IMG/VR virus record: IMGVR_UViG_3300023174_000046
Span: 124,001 to 188,000 of that record
Reading direction: 5' to 3' (one strand)
DNA: 64,000 bases
Made by a program: the position numbers and the translations under genes. Shown here one piece after another: positions 42,333-62,279 of the stretch; positions within the stretch are counted from its first letter, which is position 1; each line of letters opens with the position of its first letter. The notes below the pieces were generated by a model, which was given only the letters and a program-made list of their open reading frames with translations, made no database searches and was not told the DNA's origin.

Positions 42333-43946
42333 ATGATCCTCGAGGCTATAGATGGCAGTATATTAATTGCGCTTGATGATGCAATCTTACTAGATGTAGG
42401 AAGTACACCGCCCGCTCCAGACACAAATTATACAGAACTCCCACAAGGTGAACCTCTTACACTTTCACTTCAAAGTTACAACTTGTTAAGAACCAACGGT
42501 GTGTATTTGTGTGGAGCTGATTATTCATCAGTAACTGATTATTTGAGTACAGGGTTTTTCGATGGTTACGTAAATGTTGAAGATTTTAAAAACACAAAAA
42601 GTTTATCTGGGTATTTTCCTTCGTTCTCTGCATATAAAATTTCAACAAATGCATACAGAGTAGCAAATAATAATATTATTGATGTAAAGTTACCGCCAGT
42701 AGCAATTTCATACGATACAGATGCATCGTTTAATATTATTGTAAAAAATACAGGTGGGTATAGTAAGAGCAGGTTATATTACCCAGCTAGCATCGAACCT
42801 TCACCAACGCCCACACTAACTGTCACACCAACTGTCACACCAACTGTCACACCTACAGTAACGCCATCTGCAACACTCCCACCCCCTTTACCAAAGAAAT
42901 TGCTTAGCACAGGAAACAATTTATATGGTCAATTGGGATTGGGCAACAGTGGTGCTAGTACAAGCAGAAACACTCTCACTCCATTGACTGGCAATTGGTT
43001 ACAGGTCACATGTGGGTATTGGCACACCATGGCGCTGTCTGCTGGTGCTACAAAATGGTTTAGCGCAGGAAGCAATTTCAGTGGTCAATTAGGATTAGGA
43101 TTGGAATTTGGTAACACCAGAAGCACATTCACTCCATTGACTGGCAATTGGAGTCAGATGGCATGTGGTCACAGCTACACCATGGCACTGTCTGCTGGTA
43201 CTACTCGGTTGTTTGGCACAGGACTCAATTCCTTTGGTGGTTTTGGATTGGGTGATACAGTTCGGAGAAACACCTTCACTGCACTGACTGGCAACTGGTC
43301 CCAGATGGCATGTGGTGTGGGTCACACCATAGCATTAAGTGCAGATACAGACAGGTGGTTTATCACAGGAGACAATTTCAGCGGTCAATTAGGCTTAGGT
43401 GACAGTGGCAGCGCTACTGATAGACTCACTTTTATAGCATTGACTGGCAATTGGTCACAAGTCAGATGTGGTGGGTATCACACCATGGCACTGTCTGCTG
43501 GTACTACTCGGTTGTTTGGCACAGGAAACAATAGCAGCGGTCAATTGGGATTGAGCGACACAACTAATAGAAACACTTTCACTGCATTGACTGGCAATTG
43601 GTCACAAGTCATATGTGGAAGCGAACTTACCATAGCATTAAGTGCAGATACAGACAGGTGGTTTATCACCGGGCGGAATGACAATGGTCAATTGGGATTG
43701 GGTGATACAGTTCAGAGAAACACCTTCACTGCATTGACTGGCAATTGGTCACAGTTTGCATGTGGTAGGTTTCACACCATGGCACTGTCTGCTGGTACCG
43801 ATGCATGGTTTGGCACAGGAAACAATAGCAGCGGTCAATTGGGATTGGGTGATACAGTTCAGAGAAACACCTTCACTGCATTGACTGGCAATTGGTTACA
43901 ATTCATATGTGGAAGCGAACACACCATGGCATTGAGCGCTACATAA
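42333..43946 (+). CDS. Ig-like domain, PT stalk and 7-bladed RCC1/BLIP-II beta-propeller
   Basis: Seven G.N..GQLGLG....R.TF..LTGNW.Q..CG..HT.ALS repeats after a TPTV linker. Confidence 0.9.
   Translation: MILEAIDGSILIALDDAILLDVGSTPPAPDTNYTELPQGEPLTLSLQSYNLLRTNGVYLCGADYSSVTDYLSTGFFDGYVNVEDFKNTKSLSGYFPSFSAYKISTNAYRVANNNIIDVKLPPVAISYDTDASFNIIVKNTGGYSKSRLYYPASIEPSPTPTLTVTPTVTPTVTPTVTPSATLPPPLPKKLLSTGNNLYGQLGLGNSGASTSRNTLTPLTGNWLQVTCGYWHTMALSAGATKWFSAGSNFSGQLGLGLEFGNTRSTFTPLTGNWSQMACGHSYTMALSAGTTRLFGTGLNSFGGFGLGDTVRRNTFTALTGNWSQMACGVGHTIALSADTDRWFITGDNFSGQLGLGDSGSATDRLTFIALTGNWSQVRCGGYHTMALSAGTTRLFGTGNNSSGQLGLSDTTNRNTFTALTGNWSQVICGSELTIALSADTDRWFITGRNDNGQLGLGDTVQRNTFTALTGNWSQFACGRFHTMALSAGTDAWFGTGNNSSGQLGLGDTVQRNTFTALTGNWLQFICGSEHTMALSAT
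42900..43943 (+). repeat. Seven near-identical ~150-bp RCC1 repeat units
   Basis: Recurring DNA such as ggtcaattgggattgggtgatacagttcagagaaacaccttcactgcattgactggcaattgg. Confidence 0.9.
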
Positions 43947-44019
43947 TAATTGTATAGTTTCTTAAATGGTCTTTAATTTTAGACAAGTTATTCGTAAGGA
44001 ATTTTAATAAATATATACA

Positions 44020-47000
44020 ATGCCAACGTATAAGAAATTTACAGATTTTAGTCTTGTAACTGCACCTGCAGACGCAGATTTCATAGTGGGCTACAAGGCA
44101 GATGCATCTGCGGAGCAACGCACCACAGTGAATGATTTGCTCAGTACAAGTCTTGCCTCCAAAGGTGTATTTTTACAGGGTGACCTAAGTGTTGCAATTG
44201 GTGGTGATGGTAACACGGTCAATTCACAATGCATGGCCATTGGTGACGCAAATGTTGCTCAGGGGCTCAATTCTTTGGCTCAGGGTTATTCCAATGTTAC
44301 AGCTTTACTGTACAGCACTGCTATGGGCTATAACAACAAAGCAACAGGTGATGTGGCATTTGCACAAGGTGATTCCAATCAGGCCACAGGTGAAGCCAGC
44401 TTTGCACAAGGCACTCTCAACATTGCAGAAGGTACAGACAGTCAAGCACAAGGCTTCCGCAACATTGCTTCAGGTCCTTATTCACATGCACAAGGCTACA
44501 ACAATTGCACTGGAGGCTATGTGACCGGTAACATTTCATATGGTGCTGCACATGCACAAGGTGGTTACAATGTGGTGGCCATTCCACTTGCACATGCACA
44601 AGGTTTTGCAAACAAAATTGGTTATTATGAATATGCAGATTGGTATGCAACCAACCCACCTCGCCTGGGATTTGGTTACAGTGACCGAACTTTATCCGGT
44701 TTGAATGTGTATGGTTTGAACAATCCTGCATTGAGTTCTTCTGTGCGATTGTTTTTCATTGGTGACAATGGTATCAATACATATTCTGCCTGTGTTTCCT
44801 GCACACAGGCCAATTACTATGATCCATTTAGTCAAACAACTGGATTTACAATTTTCTTAAAAAATGATGCATCTGCTGTATTGCCTGCAGACGACTACTA
44901 TAGTCCTTCAATCATATGTGTGCCTATCACAGCATATGATGGATCCACCAGTTTCAGTAACTTTGGTGTTGCAGCTTATGCACAAGGCCTTCAAAATGTT
45001 GTAGCTGGTAATTACGCATATGCGCAAGGAATTAGCAATACAGCTCAAGGATATGCCAGCCATGCAGCAGGTTATGCCAGTAGCACAGGACCAAATGCAG
45101 TATATGCTTTTGCACATGGTTACAATTGCATAGCTTATGGTCGTTATAGCCATGCCATAGGCATAAAAGCATATGCACAGCATGATAACAGTTATGTGTG
45201 GAATTCTGATCCAAATCCTACAGGAAATTATTTTACTTCATCTCTGAGTGCACAATACAGTGTGAATGCACCCGGTGGCATTGTGCTCAGTGGAGGCAAC
45301 ACATCAGTGCAAGGGTTGGTAGTTAAGAATGGAAATAATATAGTTGCAGAACTTACTGATGGGACCAAAAACTGGATCTATGGTGGTTTAAGCGCCAGCA
45401 CATTGTTTGGTTATGGCAACAGTGCAGGCTTTTTCTATAGAGGCATAGGTCTTGCCACTGGCAATGTAGCTGTTAGTATCAATGGTGTTGCAAATTATGC
45501 TAATAGTGGGATCACAGATATTAATGGGGCATATAATTTTGTTTATAGTGATCTAGGCAGAGTTTCTGGTATTTCAAATGTGTTGGGTATGGAGAGTGGA
45601 TCTGTGGAAGGAGCCCTCAACACAGTTGGTTCACCTTTTACCATATCAAGAATAGTTTCAGCTTCAAATACCATATTTGTTCATTCTACTTTCATAAACA
45701 ACAATACCAATAGTTTTTATTTTAGACCTAATCAAGTCATACAGATAGATGGCATAGTGGGCAATACTTATAATAACTCAGCTGCCAGCAGAGTAAACAC
45801 CCGCTTCACAGTTGTATCATCTGACACAACAGCCAGATCAATTACTGTTGTTGAATCTGTAACAGCAATGCAAGATTACCGAGACAATCAGCCATTTACC
45901 GATCAAAGATATGTTGTGGCAGTACAAGGCCGTAATACAAGCAATACTTTAAATGTAGCGGGTGCTCATGCTGAGGGTATGGGTAATACGGTTTTTAGTC
46001 GAGCAGGGCATGTTGAGGGAGAAGCTAATGTAGTTACCGGTTCAGATGGACATGCAGAAAATTTTGGTAATTTTGCTGCCACTGGTGCACATGCAGAAGG
46101 TAATGAGAACCGGGCCGGTTTTGGTGTTCTGTATTTTGATTCCTATAATGCCAGTACAAAGACTTTTCAGTTGTTTACAAACTTTCTCAGCGCACATAAC
46201 ACCATTGATCTTCCTCTCACACCAAACTCTACTCTGTATTTTATTAATGTAGCTGCTGGCGCTTCAAACAAAAGAAAATTTACTAGATTTTTGGTGCTTT
46301 CATCAGATCCAGCGCTCAACACAGTAACAGCTTTATCAGCTGTGTATCCTGATGACATACCTAGTTCAGGAGTTTCTACATTGACCCGTGCAAAACAATT
46401 GCTTCAATCACTCAATAGTTATACACATGCAGAAGGATCATTCAATAATGCAAAAGGTCCATCAAGCCATGCAGAAGGTGCATTTACTATAGCTCAAGGA
46501 TCTTATTCACATGCTGCAGGTGTCAATGCAACTGCCAAGCAAGATTATACATATGCATGGAGTAGCAATGATGGTGCTGGTCCTCAAAGCAATCGTAAGA
46601 ACACAGAAACAACTCGCACTGGCCAATACATGGTGTCAGCACATGGCGGCATATTCTTCCCTGGCAAAGTGGGCATTGGCACTGATAGCATAGAAAATGC
46701 ATTAACTGTAGCTGGTACCATATCTGCTACTACCATAACAGCAGATAGCATTTCATACAATGGTGCAGGGTTCAATACATTACCCACATACAAAACTTAC
46801 CAAGTCAATTTAGCTGCTAAAAATTCTGCATGGCCTGTCATTTCAGCTGCACAGCTAGCTGAAACTGGTTACTATGATAGTGGTGCTGCATATGCCATGC
46901 CTGGCGGTCTTGTCATCAAAGGTCATTCACCTGCTTACAACACCAGCATTCAAAACTTACCTGGTTATGGCACATACGGCATGTGGCTTCAAGGTGTAGA

Positions 47001-48717
47001 TCAAATGGATCCAGGTACCACTTTTGTGAGTGATGGGCGTGCTGCAGTAACTCATGCCATGACATTCCGAGCAGGTATCAATAACTTTACCGGGGGATCA
47101 GATCATAATCACGTGCAATGGCAAGGCGCCCCTTCCAATCCTACCCAAGCATGGCAAATGACCAATGGTGGATCAACAAGTGTTTATGGTTATGGTGCCA
47201 ATACATATTCACAAAGATTTCTTGTACATACACTGCCACAATATCAAATCAGTACCACCATTGCAGCTGTTAGCGGTTTCCTTGACACTCAATCAGCTAC
47301 CCTTGGTGCAGATTCAGATACACTGTCAGGAGTTAAACTTATTCTTGATACTACTGCTGGAGTAGGCAATTATGGGTTAATTAATGTGGGAGAGGTGGTT
47401 GGGTTTGTAGTTAATCCGGGATTGGTAGGCTTGGTTGCTGCAGCTTACGAAACACAATGCACATTAATTTCATCCAATAACACTGGTACATTATCGACAT
47501 TTCAATTTAATTTCTTTATTGGTAACGGTGACAACTGGAGCTCTGCAAACAGAGGTATTCAACCAGTTAATTTAAAATCTAGAGCTGAAGGAGGCAATCC
47601 AGGCGTAAATCAAGTTACAAGTCAAATTGGTACCCCCAGCACACAGTACATAGGTCTCACCGGCAGTTACAGAGGCATGAACAAGCATTGCTTAGCCCGC
47701 TTCACTACAGGTGATATTTTAACTGGCTTCAAGCCAGGCTCTCCTCTCACATTGTGGGTACCTAAGAGCATGCCATCATCTTCTCCAATTGGCTCTGGTT
47801 TCATCACATCTGATAAAATTTCAACCTTTGCACAAGGCACATTCCCCACTGGTGTGCGCACAGGTTATTTTGATGCTTATGTAGTGAATGTGAGTGGTGG
47901 AGACATGGAATTTGCTTTGTGTAACTTGATGGATTCATATGGATTTGAAAACAGGTCTTGGCCCATATCTGCTGCTGGAAATGCGGGGTGGTTGTTGTAC
48001 GGTGGCACACAAGACACAGTGCATAGACCCACATTTGGTACTGCTGGTTTTTATTTTGAAAGAGAACCTTGGTACTTTTCTGGCCCGGATTATAACTACC
48101 TAAGCGGTGGCATGGTCAAGTGTGTTGGCTTAGGTAACTCAGAGGTGTATGGTGATTACTCTTATGGCTTGGGTTACCGTGGTGCTGTGTTAGGTAAGAA
48201 GTCCGGTACATTTGCAGGTGATTACAATGCAGTATTTGGTGATAATTCAGTAGCCATCGGTGGCAGTAATTTAATCTCTACAAGTGGCAATCAGGTAGTC
48301 ATTGGCACGTATAACAACCCCAACACCAATTCATTGTTTGTAGTTGGCAGCGGCGCATCAGATAAAAATAGAAAGAATGTATTTGAAGTAAAAGGAAATG
48401 GAGACACTACACAGTCTGGATTTAATATTAGAAGTTTCTCTCTTATTGCTGCTGCTGGTAGCAATCAAGCAACTGCTACAGAAATAACAACAGAAATTGT
48501 TACTGTTACCGGAGGTACCGGTGGTGTTAGATTGCCTGTTACAAATGGAGGTCATTACATAACATTAAATAATAGAAACATAGCTTTCTCACTTTACCCT
48601 CCCGTAGGTGGTATAATCATAGATCAGAGTATTGGTGTTAATCAACCATATGTTAGCCAGTGGTTCGGTAGCTTGATTATGTATTCGATTAGCGCTAATA
48701 CCTGGGCACTTTACTAA
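44020..48717 (+). CDS. Long fibre/adhesin with YadA-head-like (AHAQG/SHAEG) repeat clusters
   Basis: Several clusters of ~14-aa AQG/AEG repeats interleaved with globular inserts; VIGTYN..LFVVGSG..RKNVFEV neck motif; late promoter. Confidence 0.8.
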   Translation: MPTYKKFTDFSLVTAPADADFIVGYKADASAEQRTTVNDLLSTSLASKGVFLQGDLSVAIGGDGNTVNSQCMAIGDANVAQGLNSLAQGYSNVTALLYSTAMGYNNKATGDVAFAQGDSNQATGEASFAQGTLNIAEGTDSQAQGFRNIASGPYSHAQGYNNCTGGYVTGNISYGAAHAQGGYNVVAIPLAHAQGFANKIGYYEYADWYATNPPRLGFGYSDRTLSGLNVYGLNNPALSSSVRLFFIGDNGINTYSACVSCTQANYYDPFSQTTGFTIFLKNDASAVLPADDYYSPSIICVPITAYDGSTSFSNFGVAAYAQGLQNVVAGNYAYAQGISNTAQGYASHAAGYASSTGPNAVYAFAHGYNCIAYGRYSHAIGIKAYAQHDNSYVWNSDPNPTGNYFTSSLSAQYSVNAPGGIVLSGGNTSVQGLVVKNGNNIVAELTDGTKNWIYGGLSASTLFGYGNSAGFFYRGIGLATGNVAVSINGVANYANSGITDINGAYNFVYSDLGRVSGISNVLGMESGSVEGALNTVGSPFTISRIVSASNTIFVHSTFINNNTNSFYFRPNQVIQIDGIVGNTYNNSAASRVNTRFTVVSSDTTARSITVVESVTAMQDYRDNQPFTDQRYVVAVQGRNTSNTLNVAGAHAEGMGNTVFSRAGHVEGEANVVTGSDGHAENFGNFAATGAHAEGNENRAGFGVLYFDSYNASTKTFQLFTNFLSAHNTIDLPLTPNSTLYFINVAAGASNKRKFTRFLVLSSDPALNTVTALSAVYPDDIPSSGVSTLTRAKQLLQSLNSYTHAEGSFNNAKGPSSHAEGAFTIAQGSYSHAAGVNATAKQDYTYAWSSNDGAGPQSNRKNTETTRTGQYMVSAHGGIFFPGKVGIGTDSIENALTVAGTISATTITADSISYNGAGFNTLPTYKTYQVNLAAKNSAWPVISAAQLAETGYYDSGAAYAMPGGLVIKGHSPAYNTSIQNLPGYGTYGMWLQGVDQMDPGTTFVSDGRAAVTHAMTFRAGINNFTGGSDHNHVQWQGAPSNPTQAWQMTNGGSTSVYGYGANTYSQRFLVHTLPQYQISTTIAAVSGFLDTQSATLGADSDTLSGVKLILDTTAGVGNYGLINVGEVVGFVVNPGLVGLVAAAYETQCTLISSNNTGTLSTFQFNFFIGNGDNWSSANRGIQPVNLKSRAEGGNPGVNQVTSQIGTPSTQYIGLTGSYRGMNKHCLARFTTGDILTGFKPGSPLTLWVPKSMPSSSPIGSGFITSDKISTFAQGTFPTGVRTGYFDAYVVNVSGGDMEFALCNLMDSYGFENRSWPISAAGNAGWLLYGGTQDTVHRPTFGTAGFYFEREPWYFSGPDYNYLSGGMVKCVGLGNSEVYGDYSYGLGYRGAVLGKKSGTFAGDYNAVFGDNSVAIGGSNLISTSGNQVVIGTYNNPNTNSLFVVGSGASDKNRKNVFEVKGNGDTTQSGFNIRSFSLIAAAGSNQATATEITTEIVTVTGGTGGVRLPVTNGGHYITLNNRNIAFSLYPPVGGIIIDQSIGVNQPYVSQWFGSLIMYSISANTWALY

Positions 48718-51843: not shown

Positions 51844-51935
51844 GCGCGGGTGGTGAAACGGCGAAACACATCTGGCTTAAGATCAGATACGGATTAATGA
51901 TCACACTGTGGGTTCAAATCCCACCCCGCGTACCA
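51844..51935 (+). tRNA. trnL: tRNA-Leu(UAA) with encoded CCA
   Basis: Acceptor GCGCGGG/CCCGCGT-A-CCA; anticodon arm TCTGG-CTTAAGA-TCAGA; long variable arm; T arm GTGGG-TTCAAAT-CCCAC. Confidence 0.95.
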
Positions 51936-52372
51936 TTTAAAAGCTGCAAAGCTCTAGAATAATTAGCGCCCCTAGGACTTAATTTAACCGCTATTAACGC
52001 CTGTCTAATATTAGAAGTATTTTTAAGTGCTTTCAAAAGCCTATCATTTGATACTTTTTTCTTTCCACTGTTTTTATTTTTTCCTTTGTATGTTTTGGTT
52101 TGACTGTGACAGTTGGGGCATAAAAATCTTAGATTATCTAAAGTATTATTAAACGTATCACCATCAATGTGATCTAAATCTAGATTTATTGGTTTACCTC
52201 TCCATTCGGTCATATTGCAATGATTGCATTTATACTTTCTGCCTGATGTTAATAAAATTTTCTTTAAAGCATGATTAGATAAAAAAGGCTGATTTGCTTG
52301 CTTAGCCCTTTGTAGAGCTTTAGCCCTTTTGGCTTCTATAGATTTTTGCCTTTGCTCATTATTCCAACTCAT
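51914..52372 (-). mobile_element. Free-standing HNH homing endonuclease gene overlapping the tRNA 3' end antisense
   Basis: CNHC..W.GKPI.LDLDHIDGD..NN.LDNLRFLCPNCHSQT. Confidence 0.9.
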
Positions 52373-54472: not shown

Positions 54473-55216
54473 TTATACGTATTCTAACAACCTCAACCTA
54501 AGCCAATTTTGCAGACCGCCCCAAGGAGCATAGGGGTCAGGAGTATTATTAAAGGTTAACACAGGCATCCCTGTGGGTACTTGAGTCTGGGATACCCATG
54601 CTACATCTGTCGGATAATAAGATAGATCGCCTTCCTCAGAGCGAAACAAAAAACCATTGCCAACATATTCATTATAGATATACCAAAAGTCATCATCCCA
54701 TCTTATAATGTATGACCAACGATCATAATCTTCCGAACTATATCCATTAGTTTTTACATAAAAAGGTCTCTGGAAATTAGTACCAAATTCTTCCCCGTTA
54801 GGATCTTGCCACCAATTTCCAAACCCCCTGTAACCTAGAATATAACTTCCATTTATATCAATACCCTCTACACCAGAATTTCCAAGTCCAGAAACAACAA
54901 TATTAGATTTGTTAAAAGATACAAGAGCAAACACAGGAGTGCCATCAAGTTCACCATCTTGAAGTGCCCAGCTTGTTACATTCCATGGCCAGTCTATATT
55001 TTGCTGATTTGAAACCAGATTAAAATCATTATTAAGAGCTTTAAAAATCCAATTGTTGTTCTCATAATAAATGGTAAAAGCATCATCTAGAGAATTCCAA
55101 AAAGGCTTCCCTTCATTAAAACCTGCATAGCCATAAAATGTATTGGCACTTGGATTGCTTAGACCAGAGATACTGAAGTTATAATCCGGGTAATTCTGAA
55201 AAACACCTTCAGCCAT
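54473..55216 (-). CDS. Late protein with two tandem beta modules
   Basis: Two (I/V)SGL.N...P.(W/Y)...W.(F/I)...P...W...G.PV repeats; TAAATA 6 nt upstream. Confidence 0.65.
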   Translation of the reverse strand: MAEGVFQNYPDYNFSISGLSNPSANTFYGYAGFNEGKPFWNSLDDAFTIYYENNNWIFKALNNDFNLVSNQQNIDWPWNVTSWALQDGELDGTPVFALVSFNKSNIVVSGLGNSGVEGIDINGSYILGYRGFGNWWQDPNGEEFGTNFQRPFYVKTNGYSSEDYDRWSYIIRWDDDFWYIYNEYVGNGFLFRSEEGDLSYYPTDVAWVSQTQVPTGMPVLTFNNTPDPYAPWGGLQNWLRLRLLEYV

Positions 55217-55355: not shown

Positions 55356-55568
55356 ATGTTTTCCAGTCTCACCTGTCTAATATGGTATATGAAAGGTAAC
55401 ACTTTAACTTTCCATGATAAGAAAAGTCTCGCTGCAATAGGCGATACAATAGGACAAGCCGCATTTAGTGCGGCTTTTTTTATGGCCTATGGTGTTTTCT
55501 GGTTAATACTTTTACCTTTTGAATTGTTTTTGAAACTAGATGATTTTTTTAAAAAAATAAATTTATGA
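55356..55568 (+). CDS. Small hydrophobic ORF containing an internal terminator-like hairpin
   Basis: Hydrophobic C-half; ATGA overlap with the PEP-CTERM gene. Confidence 0.4.
   Translation: MFSSLTCLIWYMKGNTLTFHDKKSLAAIGDTIGQAAFSAAFFMAYGVFWLILLPFELFLKLDDFFKKINL
55456..55482 (+). terminator. Terminator/attenuator-like hairpin upstream of the surface island
   Basis: AAGCCGCA-tttag-TGCGGCTT followed by a T run. Confidence 0.6.
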
Positions 55569-57997
55569 AAACAACAAACATAATAAAGAAGGCATTGAGC
55601 TTAATTGCCGCTGCTTTCATGACAACCGCAGCCAACAATGCCCAAGCAGTAGTGTTTCTATGGAACAACACTGGATCCAACTGGACATCCCCCACCAGCT
55701 GGACCAATGGCATTCAACCTTCTGCAACCAGCTCCAGCACCACCACAGATGAAATACAGTTTGGTAATTATGGAGCCAACAATAACACTGTCATCTTGAC
55801 ATCCACCAGAGCTGCAAAAAATATCACATTCTTAGCCAATGCAAATCCATATTTGATCAACAGTTTCAATGGTGCTCAAACACTGTCATCTAGTGCAGGC
55901 ATTACCAACAATTCTACTGCTACCCAAACATTCAACATATTGGTAGAGAATGCTAACAACAGTAACACCTGGTTTCAAACTGCAGGAGGAGCATTAGTAT
56001 TCAATAATGTAGCTTCACTCACCACTGCATCTTCTAGCACATCCAGACTATTAACTCTGGCAGGAGATGGTGCATTCACATTCAACAATGAATTGAGGCA
56101 AGGTGGTTCAGCTACAGCTGGCAGAGTCCTGTACACAGGCAATGGCACAGTCACATTCAATGGCACCAACACTCTGGGTGGAGGGTTTGAAATCAAAGGA
56201 GGAGGCACTGTGAATGTGAATGGAGGCACTGGAGTCGGTCAAGGGTTGGTAACAATGGGAGCGGCAACTGGCACAACCAATACACCCAAATTGGTAATCA
56301 ACACCACCAATGGCTTGTCTGTGGCCAACAGCTTCAAGGGTTCCAGCAGCTTAGCTACCATGGCCACATTGGATTTGCTAGCAGGCAATGATGCAAATGC
56401 AGTCACGACTTTTGTTGTGAATCAATATCAAGGCAACAACATGAGCTTCACCAACCATGGTGCAGGCAAAACACTGCTACAATTCACCAATGCTGCCAAC
56501 ATACTCACACTATCCACAGACACCAGTGGTGGCAGGAGATTGATTAATAACAGCGCCAATTTAACTATACAGTTTGATGGCACCATGGACATTGGATCCA
56601 CAACTGCAGATGTTAGTACTTTAGGTGGAGCAGGTGATCTTCTCTTCAAAGGATCTCTGTTCAACAACACAGCGTCAGTGCTCAGAGGATTGAACAAAAC
56701 AGGCACTGGAACAGTCACTTTGCAAGCAGTCAATGCTTACAATGGAGACACTACCATTCAAGACGGTACACTGTTGGTGGACACTGCAGGTTCCATTGCT
56801 TCCAGTGCTGCTGTAGTATCAGGGGGTACTTTAAGAGTCAAAGGTACAGCTGGCAGTGCAGCACTTAATAGTGGAACCTTGCTAGTAGAAGGCACAGCTG
56901 GTGTAATAACACAAGGTGGGGGTACTTTTGATCTGAGAGGCACAGCTGGTGCCTTTACTATCTCCTCAGGAACTGCCACAGTGTATAGTGGTGGGTTTCT
57001 TGGCAACTCAACTCTCACTGGAGGCAGCTTGCTTAACAGTGGTACAGTAGGTGAAACAACCATTGCCACTGGCAGTACATTTGATGTGAAGACGGGCGGT
57101 ACATCTTCCAAAGCTACTGTGAATGGTGGTACTTTGTTGGTATCAGGATCAGTGGCACAGACTGTTGTTAATTCTGGCACAGCCACAGTAAATTCTGGTG
57201 GTAATTCTGGCATTACAACTGTGAATGGCAGTGCATTGAATGTGTATGGAAGAACTGGTGTATCCACAGTTAATACAGGTGGCACACTCAATGTAAAGAC
57301 AGGTGGCAGTCTGTTGGGCACTAGCACTGTAGGTGGTGGCACATTGCTAGTGGATGGAACTGCTGGTACAGTAACAGTCAACTCTGGAACTGCTACAGTT
57401 AATACTGGAGGCACAATTAACAGCACCACTGTGAATGGCGGTCTATTATCTGTGAATGGATCTGCAGGAGATGCATTGGTTAATACAGGAGGTACTTTGG
57501 GTGGTTCTGGTAGCGTGCAAGGCCTGACACTCAATGGTGGTATTGTGGCCCCAGGCAACAGCCCGGGTCTGCTCACTGCCTATGAGTTGAATGGAAGCAA
57601 TGGAACATTCCAATTCCAGTTGGGTGCACCTACTACCAGAGGGGTAACATATGATGCTATCAATGTGACAAGCTTGTTAACATTGGGTGCCAATACAGCA
57701 TGGACATTTGAAACCTTAGACAATTATGCATATGCTGATGGCAACACATATGACTTGTTTGATTGGGGTACAGCTGACATGAGCACATTTGATAGTGCAG
57801 TGCTGTTGGCTGCTCTGCCTGATCTTAACACTGCTAGTACAGATCTGAAATGGAATGTGAGCAACTTTACCATGGACGGTACAATTGGTGTTATTCCTGA
57901 ACCTTCTACAGGTTCACTCATGGTGTTTGGTATTGCTAGCTTGATAACACTCAAAGCTATAAGGAGAAGAAAATGCCAACACCAAATACATTCCTAA
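55565..57997 (+). CDS. Secreted beta-helix protein with autotransporter-associated beta-strand repeats and a PEP-CTERM sorting signal
   Basis: Signal peptide (..AQA); LNKTGTGTVTL..NAYNGDTTI..GTL; GGTLGGSG; VAPGNSPG; IPEPSTGSL-TM-RRRK. Confidence 0.92.
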   Translation: MKTTNIIKKALSLIAAAFMTTAANNAQAVVFLWNNTGSNWTSPTSWTNGIQPSATSSSTTTDEIQFGNYGANNNTVILTSTRAAKNITFLANANPYLINSFNGAQTLSSSAGITNNSTATQTFNILVENANNSNTWFQTAGGALVFNNVASLTTASSSTSRLLTLAGDGAFTFNNELRQGGSATAGRVLYTGNGTVTFNGTNTLGGGFEIKGGGTVNVNGGTGVGQGLVTMGAATGTTNTPKLVINTTNGLSVANSFKGSSSLATMATLDLLAGNDANAVTTFVVNQYQGNNMSFTNHGAGKTLLQFTNAANILTLSTDTSGGRRLINNSANLTIQFDGTMDIGSTTADVSTLGGAGDLLFKGSLFNNTASVLRGLNKTGTGTVTLQAVNAYNGDTTIQDGTLLVDTAGSIASSAAVVSGGTLRVKGTAGSAALNSGTLLVEGTAGVITQGGGTFDLRGTAGAFTISSGTATVYSGGFLGNSTLTGGSLLNSGTVGETTIATGSTFDVKTGGTSSKATVNGGTLLVSGSVAQTVVNSGTATVNSGGNSGITTVNGSALNVYGRTGVSTVNTGGTLNVKTGGSLLGTSTVGGGTLLVDGTAGTVTVNSGTATVNTGGTINSTTVNGGLLSVNGSAGDALVNTGGTLGGSGSVQGLTLNGGIVAPGNSPGLLTAYELNGSNGTFQFQLGAPTTRGVTYDAINVTSLLTLGANTAWTFETLDNYAYADGNTYDLFDWGTADMSTFDSAVLLAALPDLNTASTDLKWNVSNFTMDGTIGVIPEPSTGSLMVFGIASLITLKAIRRRKCQHQIHS

Positions 57998-58641
57998 GAC
58001 ATTTAAGACTATTAAGACGTACATATTTTGGCTTTACATTAGTTGAAATGGCAGTGGTCATAGTTATAATGGCATTTGTAATGAGTCTTTCATTCCCTTC
58101 ATATGCAGCTGTTAAACGCAAGTCATCTCAAGCTGCTTGTGCATCCAACATGAAACAAGTGGGTACAAGCATTGTGTTGTTTGCCACAGAAAATGATGGA
58201 TGGCTTCCACCAGGTCCTTCTGGTCAAACAATTAATTCGTTTATTAGCGATTCTAGGTTTGGTAGTGATACATCAAATGTTGTAGATACATCCAATCTTG
58301 AATATTATCTTACTAATTATATATCAACCAAATCTTTGGGTAAAAAAAAGAGAAAAGGCAATCCTGTGTTTTCATGCCCAGCTCATGATGAAAAGCGACC
58401 TTTGATTTGGAAGAGAGGATCTTGTTTTGGTGGAGCAGGAGGGCAATATGGTACGCAAAATTCAGAAAAATTAATTGCAGTAGATACAAATGATTATTTT
58501 TTAGTTGACTTTACAAAAGCTTTCACCAATCATTCTGGTGCATCTTTAGATCGAACAATGAAAAATCCGCATGGCGCAACCAGAAATCTGCTAAGAACAG
58601 ATGGCAGTGTGACTACAGAACTGGATAACAAGGCTAGGTAA
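57973..58641 (+). CDS. Prepilin-type N-terminal cleavage/methylation protein with a C-terminal H-X9-DG motif (DUF1559-like)
   Basis: G|FTLVEMAVVIVI..., C.SNMKQVG, FSCPA, HGATRNLLRTDG. Confidence 0.9.
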   Translation: MPTPNTFLRHLRLLRRTYFGFTLVEMAVVIVIMAFVMSLSFPSYAAVKRKSSQAACASNMKQVGTSIVLFATENDGWLPPGPSGQTINSFISDSRFGSDTSNVVDTSNLEYYLTNYISTKSLGKKKRKGNPVFSCPAHDEKRPLIWKRGSCFGGAGGQYGTQNSEKLIAVDTNDYFLVDFTKAFTNHSGASLDRTMKNPHGATRNLLRTDGSVTTELDNKAR

Positions 58642-59105
58642 TGGAGTATGTGTCTGTATCACAAGCTATTAAGGCTGCTGCAGATCTTAATACGCCTTCC
58701 ACAGAGTATCTTAATAATTTCTTGCCTGCTTATAGAAAGTACCATAAGAGGCAAAATTTCAGAAGAGCAGTTTGCAAAATTGGTTCGGGTATTGCAGTCT
58801 TTATAGTTGCATGTCTCTGCTATTCATCTATAAATAATGATAGCAAGCTGGACATTGATACAGCTTCAGGAGGTGAAATGGCACAACACAATACACATGG
58901 CAAGCACGTGGTGTTTGAAGGTGATGTAAAAGAAGTTACTAATTTTATCAAAGAGCATGTCAAAGAAAAAACACAAACGTTAAATTTAAGAGATCATTTT
59001 CAAGCTGATGTATGGGGTGTGTATGTTGAGGGAGAACAGACATTTAGATATTATTACCAATGCTTAGGGCATGGCAGATATTCTGTCTTTATTATCAATG
59101 AATAA
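58641..59105 (+). CDS. Single-pass membrane protein with a DIDTASGGE motif
   Basis: TM at about aa 47-62, followed by DIDTASGGE. Confidence 0.6.
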   Translation: MEYVSVSQAIKAAADLNTPSTEYLNNFLPAYRKYHKRQNFRRAVCKIGSGIAVFIVACLCYSSINNDSKLDIDTASGGEMAQHNTHGKHVVFEGDVKEVTNFIKEHVKEKTQTLNLRDHFQADVWGVYVEGEQTFRYYYQCLGHGRYSVFIINE

Positions 59106-59436
59106 TGCGCAACGCATAGAAAATTTTGTTCCTTATATAGTTGGGTTGTGCCTGGCAGGTAGTATTTTTTACACTGTGTACAGCCCACATGCATCCATGG
59201 TGAAGCAACACATGGACACATATGGCATGGATTTTGAATATGTAACTCCTGAAGGTTCTTGTTTTACGCAAAATATTGAACCCATTGGTCATGAGAGCCA
59301 TAAATATGTTTTAAGCCTGAGCAAACCTGCTAAACCTACAAATGCAGAAGAGCCTTTGTATGTGATGGTTGGATACACCATGAAACAAGTGAGAGTTAGA
59401 TACAGATCTAATGCATTAACATCTAATAATCTATAA
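59098..59436 (+). CDS. Single-pass membrane protein (start probably MNNAQ)
   Basis: N-terminal TM. Confidence 0.5.
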   Translation: MNNAQRIENFVPYIVGLCLAGSIFYTVYSPHASMVKQHMDTYGMDFEYVTPEGSCFTQNIEPIGHESHKYVLSLSKPAKPTNAEEPLYVMVGYTMKQVRVRYRSNALTSNNL

Positions 59437-59437
59437 T

Positions 59438-59620
59438 ATGCCATTTAATTTTTTAGACAAAGACAAGTGCAAAAGAAGCTACTATTATCAGGTGACTGAT
59501 ATTTGGCATAGATTGAGTAGTGATCACCCCATAAAGCAGATTTTGACATCTGTAATATTCATTGGCACCATAGGCTTAATAATTCATTTTATTTTTAAAC
59601 TCTTTTCTAATGATTATTAG
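59438..59620 (+). CDS. Small membrane protein
   Basis: C-terminal TM. Confidence 0.45.
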   Translation: MPFNFLDKDKCKRSYYYQVTDIWHRLSSDHPIKQILTSVIFIGTIGLIIHFIFKLFSNDY

Positions 59621-59640
59621 TTTCAACTGTCTAATACTAT

Positions 59641-60582
59641 ATGAAAACATTAATTTGCTTAGCCTTAATAGCAGTAGCAAGCCATAGTGCATGTGCTACC
59701 TCTGTATCTTTCTTAAAGAATAGTGTATATAAAATTGACAATACCAACAAAGTCACAGCTACTTTAAATGATAAAGTAGAATCCAACACACAAGTGGGCA
59801 CAGGTGCACAGAGCATGTGTGAATTGTCATTAGATGATAAGTCCATAACACGCATTGGAGCCAATGCTGTCTTCACATTTGTAGAACAAGAGCGTTTGGT
59901 TAAATGCGACAAAGGAACATTTCTGGTTTCCAAAGATCCTGCAACAGAAACTATGACAGTTACCACAGGCAGTGTTACTGCTGCAGTTAATGGCAGCACT
60001 GTGATGTTTGATGTGACAGGTGATGCAACACATGTTGCTGTTGCTGAAACAACTACTGGAGTTGTGGTGACAGATAAGAATGGCAAATCTATAACATTGC
60101 AATCTGGTGAAGGCATCTCTGCAACACCTAATGGCATGGCATCTGCAGCTCCTAAATCTGTGGACGTTAAAGATCTAGCATCATCATCGCCTCTGTTTAC
60201 TGAAGCGGGGTTGGCTCCTCTGGCCAATGATGCATTGATCAAGGGTGTTGCAAGCGCTCAAGAATCTGCAAAAGCTGCAGGCATGTCTTTTACAAGTGAA
60301 ATTAATGATGTGGTAGCTGGTAGAATTGATAGTGCTACTGCTTTGGCCAGAGCCAGTGGCATGGATGCGCCAGGTGCTGATGTGCCTGACATTGATACTG
60401 CTGCAGGGGGTGAAGCTGTAGGTAGTAATGCACCTGCAGGCAGTGGAGCAGGAGCCATCTCTGGTTCACAGCAGTTTAATCCTTTATTGAATCCCAATCT
60501 TGTGCCCCCTGTAACTTCTTCTCCCTTGCCTTCATTAGCTACGCCAATAGGAAGTGATATTACCCCTTATCCTGGTAGATAA
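59641..60582 (+). CDS. Secreted FecR-domain protein with a low-complexity tail
   Basis: Signal peptide; TGAQSMCELSLDDKSITRIGANAVF, TAAVNGS; DIDTAAGGE. Confidence 0.75.
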   Translation: MKTLICLALIAVASHSACATSVSFLKNSVYKIDNTNKVTATLNDKVESNTQVGTGAQSMCELSLDDKSITRIGANAVFTFVEQERLVKCDKGTFLVSKDPATETMTVTTGSVTAAVNGSTVMFDVTGDATHVAVAETTTGVVVTDKNGKSITLQSGEGISATPNGMASAAPKSVDVKDLASSSPLFTEAGLAPLANDALIKGVASAQESAKAAGMSFTSEINDVVAGRIDSATALARASGMDAPGADVPDIDTAAGGEAVGSNAPAGSGAGAISGSQQFNPLLNPNLVPPVTSSPLPSLATPIGSDITPYPGR

Positions 60583-60633: not shown

Positions 60634-61530
60634 ATGAAGTTATCTTTGTGCTGTCAGAGTAATGTGCTTAATGACAAAGGCATTAAATTTCGCACCATGA
60701 CTGTGACACAATTCAAGAAGAAGCCTCTCAATGAATCTTTAAATGTGTTGTGTCATAGAATTGTAGAGAACTTTCAAACACTCAAAGCTACAGTAGAATT
60801 ATGCAAAAGCATGAACCTGGCTGGCATGCGCATTGGCAGCGACTTGATACCTGTTATCAATCACCCAGATCTTAATTTAGACTTTTACAAATTACCCATG
60901 CAAGATGAAATGATGCATGCTATTGGTGAAGCTAAACAAGCCATGAAATGTTCTGGCTTACGCTTTTCTGCTCATCCTTCTGAGTTTATTAGCTTAACAT
61001 CCGATAACCCTAAAGTTGTTGCCAATAGCATTCGCGATCTGATTGCTCATGCATTAGTGTTTGAATTGCTTGCATTGCCTGAATCATATGAAGCACCATT
61101 GAACATTCATATTCGCAAAGATGGTGATCCTGAAACGATCTATGCCAATGTGGTGCGTAGTTTGAAGCAATGTCCTGTCAATGTGACCAAGCGATTGGTT
61201 TTTGAGAATAATGACAACAAGAAAGGTGTGTGGAGCATCAGCAATTTGGTAAAATATTTTCATGCTCGTGATGGCATACCCATCACTTTTGATAATTTGC
61301 ATCACAAAATGTTGCCTGGAGATCTATCAGAGTCTGAAGCATTTCACTTGGCACATGGCACATGGCCTGTGATGCCCATATTTCATTATTCAGAAGGCAT
61401 AGGTGACACACGCAAGCATGCAGATTACGCACAATATGCTCCTCCAGATTATGGCAAACCTGTGGTATGGGAAGTGGAGCTCAAAGCTAAGGATAGAGCT
61501 ATTAACAAGATCATGGGCATGATTTCATGA
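60634..61530 (+). CDS. uvsE: UV-damage endonuclease UvsE/UvdE
   Basis: RIGSDLIP, RFSAHP, LNIH, RLVFENND, FDNLHH, HYSE, HADY, VELKAKD. Confidence 0.93.
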   Translation: MKLSLCCQSNVLNDKGIKFRTMTVTQFKKKPLNESLNVLCHRIVENFQTLKATVELCKSMNLAGMRIGSDLIPVINHPDLNLDFYKLPMQDEMMHAIGEAKQAMKCSGLRFSAHPSEFISLTSDNPKVVANSIRDLIAHALVFELLALPESYEAPLNIHIRKDGDPETIYANVVRSLKQCPVNVTKRLVFENNDNKKGVWSISNLVKYFHARDGIPITFDNLHHKMLPGDLSESEAFHLAHGTWPVMPIFHYSEGIGDTRKHADYAQYAPPDYGKPVVWEVELKAKDRAINKIMGMIS

Positions 61531-62279
61531 ACATTCTCATCATTGATGCTACCAATTTGTTGTACCGCATTTATCATGTGTTGCGTGTCACTGGAGGGCA
61601 GGACATGGTGCCTGCATACATGCGCAGCATCAACAAGTATGTGCGTGATTTTGCACCTGATGCAACATATGCAGTGTCAGATAAGCGCTTGATCAAAGGG
61701 CAGAAGAATTACAGACGTCAACAAGCTGATTACAAGCAAAACAGAGACTGTAGCATGTGGGAAACTGTGCATGCTGCTGAAGATGAATTGGAGCAGGTCA
61801 TGCAAACACAAGGCATTCACATGATGTATCCAGGCATACTGGAAGCAGATGATGTAATTGCATTCTTGTGCAAACATTTGACTGGGCGCAAGACCATAGT
61901 ATCCACAGACAATGACATGGTGCAATTGATTGATGAACATACACAATTGTATTCACCCATCAAGAAGGTGATCATTGATGTGCACAATTGCGAACAGCAT
62001 TTGCCAGTGCATGTGAACAAGTATCTGCTATACAAGAGCATACTAGGTGATGCATCAGATTGCATCAAAGGGTTATCAGGTTATGGCAAAGTGAAAGCCA
62101 AGAGATTAACAGAAAATTATGATGCGGAGTTTGCAAAATTATCTGTTGAACTGCAACAGCAACAGCTCAATAACATGAGGCTCATGAACTTGAATCAAGG
62201 TCTTATAGAACATCCAGAAGAACGCAATTGTTACATGCAGCAATTGCAACAATTAACAACCCAGAGTGCTTGCAATTGA
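61527..62279 (+). CDS. rnh: T4 RNase H-like 5'-3' exonuclease
   Basis: IIDATNL, YKQNR, LEADDVIA, VSTDND, LGDASD.I.G..GYG.VKA. Confidence 0.88.
   Translation: MNILIIDATNLLYRIYHVLRVTGGQDMVPAYMRSINKYVRDFAPDATYAVSDKRLIKGQKNYRRQQADYKQNRDCSMWETVHAAEDELEQVMQTQGIHMMYPGILEADDVIAFLCKHLTGRKTIVSTDNDMVQLIDEHTQLYSPIKKVIIDVHNCEQHLPVHVNKYLLYKSILGDASDCIKGLSGYGKVKAKRLTENYDAEFAKLSVELQQQQLNNMRLMNLNQGLIEHPEERNCYMQQLQQLTTQSACN

What the first reader, a model, noticed from the sequence alone, without database searches (positions are those of the whole stretch)
55565..60582. Phage-borne host cell-surface module: PEP-CTERM beta-helix, H-X9-DG pilin-like protein, membrane proteins and a FecR-like protein
Seen: a compact co-oriented cluster of exported proteins with intact sorting signals. 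Established: PEP-CTERM proteins need a host exosortase, G|FTLxE proteins need prepilin peptidase, and both families are greatly expanded in Verrucomicrobia/Planctomycetes. Neither processing enzyme is in this window. Inference: the phage feeds its own substrates into host sorting pathways to remodel the infected cell surface, for example for pilus jamming or superinfection exclusion, grazing avoidance, adhesion or nutrient capture. This is unusual cargo for a T4-like phage and also predicts the host.
Basis: partly seen in the sequence, partly recalled or inferred. Interest (0 to 1): 0.8.

Follow-up and report, generated by a model that had tools for sequence, protein, structure and literature searches.

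The report
Phage cassette of host-sorted envelope proteins
A widespread group of large uncultured lake phages carries a conserved six-gene block of proteins that need the host's own export and sorting enzymes, so the infected cell's surface is probably rebuilt by the phage, though what for is not shown.

Summary
Window 55565-60582 (+) is a tight six-gene operon:
- A: Sec signal, PATR beta-helix and a PEP-CTERM tail.
- B: a prepilin-type pseudopilin with G|FTLVE and H-X9-DG.
- C, D, E: three single-pass membrane proteins.
- F: a secreted FecR-domain protein.

It is real phage DNA, not a host chimera. The window is part of a 217-kb IMG/VR contig with a T4-type portal. The same block lies in 13 further viral contigs and in independent lake metagenomes. 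Its third-codon-position G+C (GC3) matches the phage's. All five genes tested are under purifying selection (dN/dS 0.15-0.24, dS up to about 2).

The sorting signals are conserved: 119 of 120 A homologues keep the PEP tail and 56 of 56 B homologues keep H-X9-DG. The nearest cellular relatives are all from the PVC group (Planctomycetota, Verrucomicrobiota, Lentisphaerae). They are distant, and phage B forms one clade.

The function is inferred, not shown. I favour modification of the host pilus or pseudopilus and surface to block further phage adsorption, by analogy with prophage P-FimU. I found no paper describing a PEP-CTERM protein in a phage.

Caveats:
- The window copy scores below Pfam's PEP-CTERM cut-off, and TIGR04294 matches none of 29 B homologues.
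- Expression is only suggested by metatranscriptome libraries.
- The host is unidentified.

The parts
55356..55568 (+). g70: small (70 aa) one-helix membrane ORF whose stop overlaps the start of A (ATGA). Possible first gene of the operon; membership uncertain.
   Evidence: Conserved at 62% aa in L003 and fused to A in homologue P0183. A terminator-like hairpin lies inside it at 55456-55476.
55565..57997 (+). Gene A: 810-aa exported beta-helix protein (PATR, the autotransporter-associated beta-strand repeat) with a PEP-CTERM sorting tail.
   Evidence: dN/dS 0.15. Homologues range from 657 to 832 aa.
55565..55648 (+). A: Sec signal peptide, aa 1-28, ending AQA before the invariant mature N-terminus VVFLWNN.
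   Evidence: Read from the sequence. Every full-length homologue has a signal peptide. At least three different leader versions precede the same mature end.
56690..56779 (+). A: best-scoring PATR repeat, aa 376-405.
   Evidence: PF12951 30.5 bits and TIGR02601 32.7 bits.
57893..57970 (+). A: PEP-CTERM tail, aa 777-802 (VIPEPS, hydrophobic helix, RRRK).
   Evidence: PF07589 18.4 bits against a cut-off of 20.7. Motif kept in 119 of 120 homologues despite sequence change.
57973..58641 (+). Gene B: 222-aa prepilin-type pseudopilin, a compact divergent relative of the DUF1559 / H-X9-DG family. Overlaps the end of A by 25 nt.
   Evidence: dN/dS 0.18.
57973..58032 (+). B: basic leader peptide, aa 1-20. 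Predicted prepilin-peptidase cut after G20, so mature residue 1 is F21 and E25 is residue +5.
   Evidence: F21 aligns with residue 1 of mature pilins and GspG in solved structures. F21, T22, L23 and E25 are invariant.
58570..58605 (+). B: H-X9-DG motif, H200 to G211.
   Evidence: Kept in 56 of 56 homologues. The columns align with the cellular motif in alignment A3.
58641..59105 (+). Gene C: 154-aa bitopic membrane protein with a basic N-terminus, one helix and a beta-alpha-beta4 C-domain of about 70 aa. Known only from this phage clade.
   Evidence: Split into C1 and C2 in most relatives. dN/dS 0.22 for the C-domain.
59071..59436 (+). Gene D: 121-aa protein with an N-terminal signal-anchor helix and a conserved C-domain of about 80 aa.
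   Evidence: dN/dS 0.24. The structure model was too poor to use, pLDDT 52.
59438..59620 (+). Gene E: 60-aa tail-anchored membrane ORF, found only in the window and its closest relative L002.
59641..60582 (+). Gene F: 313-aa secreted FecR-domain protein (signal peptide aa 1-19, FecR domain aa 52-136).
   Evidence: PF04773 35 bits against a cut-off of 24. 180 homologues. Atlas neighbours are FecR proteins of about 300 aa from Verrucomicrobiota. dN/dS 0.16.
60466..60549 (+). F: conserved C-terminal tail SQQFNPLLNPNLVPPV..P..ATPI. In relatives that lack F, an unrelated small secreted protein F' in the same slot carries the same tail.

Best explanation
This is a genuine, long-resident phage operon. 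Its products are made in the infected cell and sent to the cell envelope by host machinery.

Shown:
- The genes are conserved, selected and phage-borne.
- All the targeting signals are present and maintained.

Inferred, step by step:
- A is exported by Sec and held by its C-terminal helix. A host exosortase then cuts it at PEP and passes it to the cell surface.
- B inserts in the inner membrane. The host prepilin peptidase cuts it after G20, and it enters a host type II secretion or type IV pilus-like fibre in place of a host H-X9-DG pseudopilin.
- C, D and E sit in the inner membrane with small domains on the outer side.
- F is released into the periplasm.

Most likely purpose, by analogy only: replacing or capping a host fibre component and coating the surface. 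Further phages, including the phage's own progeny, would then no longer adsorb to a cell that is already infected or to its debris. That is superinfection exclusion or receptor masking.

The host is most likely a freshwater member of the PVC group, with Verrucomicrobiota slightly favoured.
For: Phage origin:
- The window is part of IMGVR_UViG_3300023174_000046 (217,413 bp).
- It has a T4-type portal and a tail fibre.
- A-B-C(-D)(-F) recurs in 13 other viral contigs of up to 171,916 bp, beside a T4-type terminase, ribonucleotide reductase and virion genes.
- Independent lake DNA runs hold it. One contig bridges F into UvdE with one mismatch.
- Cassette GC3 is 0.22-0.38, against 0.25-0.46 for other phage genes.

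Selection: median dN/dS is 0.15 (A), 0.18 (B), 0.22 (C-domain), 0.24 (D) and 0.16 (F), with dS of 0.3-2.

Signals maintained:
- The signal peptide and PEP tail of A are kept in 119 of 120 homologues, while the leader and tail sequences themselves vary.
- H-X9-DG is kept in 56 of 56 and G|FTLxE in 51 of 56 B homologues.

Family links:
- The phage B profile against the DUF1559 profile gives probability 99.9%.
- F21 of B aligns with mature residue 1 of pilins.
- All 80 best genome loci are PVC bacteria.
- Atlas neighbours of A and F are Verrucomicrobiota.

No processing enzyme was found in the window.

Precedents for the mechanism:
- Prophage P-FimU is built into the host pilus and blocks phage adsorption. 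The same paper reports PilA-like genes in virulent phages (PMC12952977).
- Pilins of the archaeal virus SNJ2 hijack host secretion (PMC12426801).

RNA libraries hold related contigs over A, B, C and F.
Against: - No experiment or host genome is available. Processing, localisation and any exclusion phenotype are all inferred.
- The window's PEP-CTERM score is under Pfam's cut-off, and TIGR02595 and TIGR04294 give no hit.
- B and A are under purifying rather than diversifying selection. That fits a phage-versus-phage arms race less well than the highly diverse P-FimU proteins do.
- Exclusion does not obviously need an 810-aa beta-helix, a FecR-domain protein and three membrane proteins kept together.
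- Only 64 kb of the 217-kb genome was inspected for an exosortase or a prepilin peptidase.
- The RNA evidence could be DNA carry-over.
Confidence: 0.4

Rival explanations
1. Adhesion or aggregation module. The exosortase-sorted beta-helix A, with its helpers, makes infected cells sticky. They clump with uninfected hosts or attach to particles, which helps progeny find new hosts or alters sinking and grazing.
For: PATR beta-helix proteins with PEP-CTERM tails resemble adhesins, and A's nearest neighbours are such proteins of Verrucomicrobiota. From my own knowledge, PEP-CTERM/exosortase systems are linked to exopolysaccharide and floc formation. The cassette often lies beside glycosyltransferase, sulfotransferase and nucleotide-sugar genes. 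F weakly resembles the Leptospira FecR-type adhesins Lsa33 and Lsa19. The repeat number of A varies, giving 657-832 aa.
Against: No binding domain or ligand was identified. It does not explain the strictly linked pseudopilin B. The benefit to a lytic phage is speculative. The Lsa hits are far below their cut-offs (19.6 bits against 420).
Confidence: 0.2
2. Envelope signalling or lysis-timing module. F acts in the periplasm on a host FecR/ECF-type or protease pathway through its FecR domain and its C-terminal T-P-I tail. C and D act like a holin/antiholin or spanin-type pair. The block would then control envelope stress or the time of lysis, and A and B would be accessory.
For: C is N-in with one helix and an outer domain. 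D has a signal-anchor with an outer domain. These are the topologies of T4 holin T and antiholin RI (topology; the comparison is from my own knowledge). F' proteins share only the C-terminal tail with F, so the tail is the conserved working part.
Against: C and D hit no PHROG family, and C has no fold match in the PDB. No endolysin lies nearby. F lacks every part of FecR that signals across the membrane.
Confidence: 0.12
3. Virion proteins. A is a tail-spike or fibre-like beta-helix, and the block belongs to the adsorption apparatus.
For: Beta-helices are common in tail spikes. In several relatives the block lies directly upstream of tail-fibre-like or virion genes: phrog_10356, a 952-aa BspA-LRR protein and a 1266-aa protein.
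Against: A has a cleavable Sec signal and a membrane-anchoring PEP-CTERM tail in 119 of 120 homologues. B has a prepilin leader. T4-type virions assemble in the cytoplasm. A and F hit no PHROG structural family.
Confidence: 0.06
4. Artefact: host DNA joined to a phage contig by misassembly, or decaying, non-functional recently captured host genes.
For: The block has a higher G+C than the window (0.42 against 0.35), and its families are typical of bacteria.
Against: The same block sits in 13 other viral contigs with different phage flanks and in independent runs that bridge the junction. GC3 is phage-like. dN/dS is 0.15-0.24. No cellular relative exceeds 45% identity, and phage B forms one clade with 100/100 support on a long stem.
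Confidence: 0.01

Closest known systems
Prophage-encoded minor pilin P-FimU of Pseudomonas aeruginosa F10-like phages, and PilA-like genes in virulent phages (Sztanko et al., Cell Rep 2026, PMC12952977)
   Same: A phage gene encodes a prepilin-type protein. It must be processed and assembled by the host pilus machinery, where it replaces a host component. The published effect is a block of phage adsorption. The paper notes that some carriers are virulent phages.
   Different: B belongs to the PVC-specific DUF1559 / H-X9-DG pseudopilin family, not to FimU or PilA. It is at most about 45% identical to any cellular copy, and over the N-terminal half only. It is conserved rather than hypervariable. 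It is always linked to a PEP-CTERM protein and other envelope genes. The carrier is a T4-like phage of about 200 kb from lakes.
Type IV pilins of the temperate archaeal virus SNJ2 (Xiang et al., Cell Rep 2025, PMC12426801)
   Same: Virus-encoded pilins hijack the host secretion machinery and become a cell-surface structure that changes host behaviour and virus adsorption.
   Different: An archaeal provirus with major pilins that form whole filaments, and no companion sorted proteins.
Cellular PEP-CTERM/exosortase substrates with PATR beta-helix repeats (PF07589/TIGR02595 with PF12951/TIGR02601) of Verrucomicrobiota and relatives
   Same: The same architecture: Sec signal, PATR beta-helix, PEP motif, membrane helix and basic tail.
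   Different: It is encoded by a phage, with no exosortase or EPS locus seen beside it. The window copy scores just under Pfam's PEP-CTERM cut-off. I found no published phage example. It has no hit in 50,697 phage records or in PHROGs.
Exported superinfection-exclusion and receptor-masking proteins of virulent and temperate phages (T4 Imm and Sp, T5 Llp, phi80 Cor; from my own knowledge)
   Same: Phage proteins carrying host export signals act in the envelope of the infected cell to stop further adsorption or DNA entry.
   Different: Those are single small proteins using Sec or lipoprotein signals. Here six linked genes use two further host sorting routes, the prepilin peptidase and the exosortase.
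FecR-domain proteins (PF04773): FecR anti-sigma factors and secreted FecR-type proteins such as Leptospira Lsa33/Lsa19
   Same: F has the central FecR domain above Pfam's cut-off. Like the Leptospira proteins and the roughly 300-aa Verrucomicrobiota family, it is a secreted stand-alone form.
   Different: It has no anti-sigma domain, no membrane helix and no C-terminal FecR module. It has its own conserved proline-rich tail ending ATPI, which it shares with unrelated F' proteins.

Membership tests
PEP-CTERM sorting domain (PF07589 / TIGR02595) | Score at or above the curated cut-off of the family model | tested here: not met
   PF07589 scores 18.4 bits against a cut-off of 20.7, E 0.0023. TIGR02595 is not listed at E up to 0.1. 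Two homologues, P0159 and P0173, carry a precomputed PF07589 hit.
PEP-CTERM sorting domain (PF07589 / TIGR02595) | At the extreme C-terminus: a P-E-P motif, then a hydrophobic helix, then a basic cluster; and an N-terminal signal peptide | tested here: met
   The window tail reads VIPEPSTGSLMVFGIASLITLKAIRRRK. [VI]PEP plus helix plus R/K is found in 119 of 120 homologues, and every full-length one has a signal peptide.
PEP-CTERM sorting domain (PF07589 / TIGR02595) | An exosortase (EpsH/Xrt) in the same cell | not testable with these tools
   The host is unknown. No polytopic candidate was found in the 64-kb window. The other 153 kb of the contig was not read.
PATR / autotransporter-associated beta-strand repeat (PF12951 / TIGR02601) | Repeat model at or above the cut-off | tested here: met
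   PF12951 scores 30.5 bits (cut-off 27) and TIGR02601 32.7 bits (cut-off 19.85). PF12951 is precomputed for almost all homologues.
Prepilin-type N-terminal cleavage/methylation domain (PF07963 / TIGR02532) | Model at or above the cut-off; G at -1, hydrophobic +1, E at +5, followed by a hydrophobic helix | tested here: met
   PF07963 scores 26.3 bits (cut-off 21.2) and TIGR02532 17.9 bits (cut-off 16.3). All 29 family members match. F21 aligns with residue 1 of mature pilins in solved structures.
H-X9-DG / DUF1559 pseudopilin family (TIGR04294 / PF07596) | Curated model hit | tested here: not met
   TIGR04294 matches 0 of 29 members at E up to 10. PF07596 gives only weak hits in 14 of 29, best E 0.0026. 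JGI names some homologues as H-X9-DG proteins.
H-X9-DG / DUF1559 pseudopilin family (TIGR04294 / PF07596) | Homology to family members, with the C-terminal H-X9-DG motif and the family motifs CASNMxQxG, GWLPP and VFxCP | tested here: met
   hhalign gives probability 99.9%, E 2e-31 over residues 17-143. H200, N205, L207, D210 and G211 align with the cellular motif. The motif is in 56 of 56 homologues.
FecR domain (PF04773) | Domain model at or above the cut-off | tested here: met
   35 bits against a cut-off of 24, residues 52-136. The hit is precomputed for all 120 listed homologues.
FecR anti-sigma factor / ferric citrate regulator (PRK09774) | Equivalog score; N-terminal cytoplasmic anti-sigma domain and one membrane helix | tested here: not met
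   15.1 bits against a cut-off of 385. The N-terminus is a cleavable signal peptide, and there is no internal membrane helix.
T4-like (Straboviridae/Kyanoviridae-type) myovirus | gp20-type portal, T4-type large terminase and a contractile-tail gene set | tested here: inconclusive
   The portal matches phrog_213 at E 1e-104 and is about 35% identical to cyanomyovirus g20. A tail fibre is present. A T4-type terminase was seen only in the relatives' contigs. Sheath, tube and major capsid genes were not checked.
Known anti-phage defence systems (PADLOC-DB) | Any model hit | tested here: not met
   No hit for g70, A-F or the upstream ORF (54473-55216, - strand) at E up to 0.01.

The most novel reading that the evidence does not exclude
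The six genes form one phage-built envelope device, not a set of independent decoys. B primes or caps a host type II secretion or pilus-like fibre. C, D and E form its inner-membrane adaptor. A and F/F' are the cargo it presents, with A finished by the host exosortase and the shared ATPI tail of F and F' acting as a docking signal. A lytic T4-like phage would then install a new surface organelle on PVC bacteria during infection. This would be the first case of a virus using the exosortase pathway.
Probability: 0.15. Interest if true: 0.85.

Novelty: new variant of a known kind. Interest (0 to 1): 0.62.

Why it matters
- It extends the idea of phage proteins that ride host sorting pathways to alter the infected cell's surface. 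So far this has been shown for pilins of Pseudomonas prophages and of an archaeal virus. Here it would reach a second pathway (PEP-CTERM/exosortase), a new bacterial group (PVC) and large lytic-type phages that are common in lakes.
- It gives a testable host assignment for a very large uncultured phage lineage. At least 598 IMG/VR contigs carry a related terminase, and none has a cultured member.
- It offers a natural handle on two cellular families of unknown function that are hugely expanded in PVC bacteria: the DUF1559 / H-X9-DG pseudopilins and the PATR PEP-CTERM proteins. A phage has kept one minimal copy of each under strong selection.

Tried and rejected
- GenBank phages: megablast of the region and tblastn of A, B and F against 50,697 records found nothing.
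- PHROGs: no family for A, C, D or F. B gave only weak hits to its N-terminal helix in two families of unknown function.
- PADLOC: nothing.
- Gene C: an exhaustive HMMER search of 1.84 billion representative proteins found only 11 hits. Ten are short pieces or the full-length phage form; one is a weak partial match (38% identity, six short stretches) in an 817-aa protein that I did not follow up. The C-domain model is fair (pLDDT about 84), but no PDB match reached E 0.001.
- Gene D: the model has pLDDT 52, so no fold search was made. The Atlas gave no usable neighbour, best score 0.74.
- Gene F: no relative in the PDB by sequence.
- Cellular counterpart of the block: none of the 80 best PVC loci holding a DUF1559 gene has A-, C-, D- or F-like neighbours. 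One locus has a weak C-terminal match to A.
- Promoters and terminators: sigma-70-like sites are no more frequent than in shuffled sequence, and the T4 late motif TATAAATA is not enriched. No statement on timing is possible.
- Tandem repeats in A: none at the DNA level.
- Tree building: two attempts to pull cellular ORFs from the genome loci by motif recovered only 1 and 3 ORFs, on absurdly long branches. I discarded them. The tree I report uses 30 database proteins and 13 phage rows.
- Polytopic ORFs: the hydropathy scan flagged 2336-2671 (-), 3632-4153 (-) and 5110-5433 (+). I dismissed them as nested in longer ORFs without searching them. The fourth, 35904-36716, has no Pfam hit.
- Literature: no paper links PEP-CTERM or DUF1559 to phages.

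Full report
**1. What is there**

Window 55565-60582 carries six co-oriented ORFs on the + strand. They overlap or lie at most 20 nt apart.

- **A (55565-57997, 810 aa).** It starts with a typical Sec signal peptide ending AQA. It matches the PATR / autotransporter-associated beta-strand repeat above threshold: PF12951 at 30.5 bits (cut-off 27) and TIGR02601 at 32.7 bits (cut-off 19.85). It ends in VIPEPS, a hydrophobic helix and RRRK. Pfam's PEP-CTERM model scores 18.4 bits, just under its cut-off of 20.7, and TIGR02595 does not hit.
- **B (57973-58641, 222 aa).** It has a basic 20-residue leader, G|FTLVE and a hydrophobic helix. PF07963 scores 26.3 bits (cut-off 21.2) and TIGR02532 17.9 bits (cut-off 16.3). 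It also has H200-X9-D210-G211.
- **C (154 aa), D (121 aa) and E (60 aa).** Each has one predicted membrane helix and no family hit.
- **F (59641-60582, 313 aa).** It has a signal peptide and a FecR domain (PF04773, 35 bits, cut-off 24). It is not a FecR anti-sigma factor: PRK09774 scores 15 bits against a cut-off of 385, and there is no anti-sigma domain or membrane helix.

A hydropathy scan of all window ORFs found no credible polytopic protein that could be an exosortase or a prepilin peptidase. The one candidate, 35904-36716, has no Pfam hit. The one reservation is that the curated PEP-CTERM and H-X9-DG models are not passed by score.

**2. It is phage DNA, not a chimera**

- The window is positions 124001-188000 of IMGVR_UViG_3300023174_000046, a 217,413-bp contig.
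- It has a gp20-type portal. This matches phrog_213 at E 1e-104 and is about 35% identical to cyanomyovirus portals. It also has a tail fibre.
- The block A-B-C, usually with D and F, is present in 13 other IMG/VR contigs of up to 171,916 bp.
- The flanks differ between contigs, but they are phage genes:
  - a T4-type large terminase and a virion protein in L006;
  - ribonucleotide reductase and a sigma-70 region-2 protein in L175;
  - UvdE and a 5'-3' exonuclease in the window and L003.
- The L006 terminase is shared at 80-100% identity by three other cassette contigs. It has at least 598 relatives in IMG/VR.
- Independent lake and freshwater DNA runs from other studies hold the stretch. One Logan contig bridges F into UvdE with a single mismatch.
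- GC3 of the cassette genes is 0.22-0.38, within the range of the portal, fibre and other phage genes (0.25-0.46). The higher overall G+C of A and F comes from amino-acid composition.

**3. The genes are functional and their signals are maintained**

- Pairwise Nei-Gojobori estimates give median dN/dS of 0.15 (A), 0.18 (B), 0.22 (C-domain), 0.24 (D) and 0.16 (F), at dS of about 0.3-2.
- Among 120 A homologues, every full-length one has a signal peptide and 119 keep [VI]PEP + helix + basic tail. The leader exists in at least three unrelated versions and the tail in several, while the mature N-terminus VVFLWNN is invariant. That is the pattern expected if the signals, not their exact sequences, are under selection.
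- All 56 full-length B homologues keep H-X9-DG, and 51 keep G[FM]T[LM]xE.

**4. Family relations and host**

- B has about 73 close homologues, 70-95% identical. Then comes a gap to cellular DUF1559 / H-X9-DG proteins at about 25-45% identity.
- Profile-profile comparison joins the two groups at probability 99.9% (E 2e-31) over residues 17-143. In a joint alignment the H-X9-DG columns coincide.
- TIGR04294 nevertheless matches 0 of 29 phage-clade members, and PF07596 matches only weakly in 14 of 29. I therefore call B a compact, divergent relative of that family.
- F21 of B aligns with residue 1 of mature pilins and GspG in solved structures.
- In a scan of one genome per species, the 80 best loci are all PVC bacteria: mostly Planctomycetota, plus Verrucomicrobiota and one Lentisphaerae. 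None has A-, C-, D- or F-like neighbours.
- In a maximum-likelihood tree of 13 phage rows and the 30 nearest database proteins, the phage copies form one clade (100/100) on a stem of 3.55 changes per site. The other hits were left out of that tree. This points to one old acquisition, and no donor can be named.
- Atlas neighbours of A are PATR/PEP-CTERM proteins of Verrucomicrobiota and Planctomycetota. Those of F are FecR proteins of about 300 aa from Verrucomicrobiota, scoring 0.95-0.96.
- Gene C has no demonstrable relative outside the phage clade among 1.84 billion representative proteins.

**5. Expression**

- Two lake metatranscriptome libraries hold contigs 90-95% alike over A, B, C and F. 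One is a 955-nt contig across the A/B junction.
- At least 24 such libraries hold 6-15% of gene A's sampled 31-mers.
- This is consistent with transcription of close relatives.

**6. Mechanism**

Shown: a selected, phage-borne operon whose products carry Sec, prepilin and PEP-CTERM signals, with no processing enzyme found nearby.

Inferred:
- A is exported and then handled by a host exosortase.
- B is cut after G20 by the host prepilin peptidase and enters a host pseudopilus or pilus.
- C, D and E are inner-membrane proteins with outward-facing domains.
- F is periplasmic.

For the purpose, I rank receptor masking or superinfection exclusion first. There is direct precedent for phage-encoded pilins that are built into the host fibre and block adsorption, including PilA-like genes in virulent phages (PMC12952977). 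Virus pilins are also known to hijack host secretion (PMC12426801).

Three things count against this ranking: the lack of diversifying selection, the unexplained need for six linked genes, and the absence of any experiment.

The rivals are:
- adhesion or aggregation through A, which fits the neighbouring glycan genes seen;
- a periplasmic signalling or lysis-timing role for F, C and D;
- virion proteins, made unlikely by the export signals;
- an assembly artefact, which is refuted.

**7. Novelty**

- The pilin component is a new member of a recently described kind.
- I found no paper describing a phage-borne PEP-CTERM/exosortase substrate, or its fixed linkage to a pseudopilin and a secreted FecR-domain protein.
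- A, B and F have no match in deposited phage genomes. A, C, D and F hit no PHROG family; B gave only weak N-terminal hits to two PHROG families of unknown function.
- I rate the cassette a new variant of a known kind, namely phage proteins that use host sorting routes to alter the infected cell's surface.

Noticed in passing
window 58641-59105; L005 10679-11136, and the same region of L004, L006-L013 and L175: Gene C is one ORF in the window, L002 and L003. In at least six other distinct loci it is split into C1 (88 aa, membrane helix) and C2 (72 aa, no signal), which overlap by 28 nt with C2 in the -1 frame. The junction GAA-AAA-TGC would let a -1 slip on GAAAAAT read straight into C2, colinear with the fused form. 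This is either two genes or a programmed frameshift.
   Followed up: partly
window 60466-60549; L006 11447-11779, L010 3131-3463, L013 8010-8393: F ends in a conserved proline-rich tail (SQQFNPLxNPNLVPPV..PNP.EATPI). In many relatives this is the very C-terminus. Loci that lack F carry, in the same slot, an unrelated secreted protein of 110-127 aa with the same tail. The tail looks like a shared docking or sorting signal. Its T-P-I end resembles a PDZ ligand, which is my speculation.
   Followed up: partly
L005 12090-12356, and the equivalent ORF in L004, L006-L013 and L175 13792-14058: A conserved 88-aa protein, two-helix by eye (M.IKIKNWW..LK.YDKFFFI...), follows F or F' in most relatives, ahead of tail-fibre-like genes. 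It is missing after F in the window, where UvdE follows.
   Followed up: no
window 5676-32723: A large glycan or small-molecule modification island. It holds a phrog_24687 glycosyltransferase, GT8, a DXD glycosyltransferase, a galactosyl/Fringe-like transferase, two FkbM methyltransferases and an HtrL/YibB-like protein. It also holds a radical-SAM/SPASM protein, a PhyH dioxygenase and a flavin-dependent tryptophan halogenase (31305-32723, E 9e-84). Relatives carry sulfotransferase, UDP-glucose dehydrogenase and epimerase genes next to the cassette.
   Followed up: partly
window 55565-55648 and the homologues P0121-P0240: The signal peptide of A occurs in at least three unrelated versions (MKTTNIIKKALSLIAAAF.., MKINLTKRLLKSTAAKLIAAFLMSG.., MKKIILTILTAITLTANSQA) in front of an invariant mature end VVFLWNN. 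The PEP-CTERM tail also has several versions. This suggests module swapping between phage lineages.
   Followed up: no
window 60634-62279: A UV-damage endonuclease UvdE (PF03851, E 2e-34) and a 5'-3' exonuclease/FEN lie directly downstream. This repair pair is conserved with the cassette only in L003.
   Followed up: no
window 51844-52372: tRNA-Leu(TAA) at 51844-51935 (+) overlaps by about 22 nt the 3' end of a minus-strand ORF, 51914-52372. By eye that ORF has an HNH-endonuclease motif (HCNM..DHIDGD..N..NLRFLCPNCH). No tool was run on it.
   Followed up: no
window 42333-48717; L005 1057-6135: Very large putative surface or fibre proteins lie near the head genes: an RCC1-repeat protein (537 aa) and a 1565-aa protein with no Pfam hit. 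In L005 a 1692-aa PA14/GLEYA/LamG lectin-like protein lies about 1.4 kb upstream of the cassette, with two ORFs between them.
   Followed up: no
window 55456-55476: A strong terminator-like hairpin (9-bp stem followed by a T-run) lies inside the small ORF g70, just upstream of A. Either g70 is not translated in full, or the hairpin has another role.
   Followed up: no
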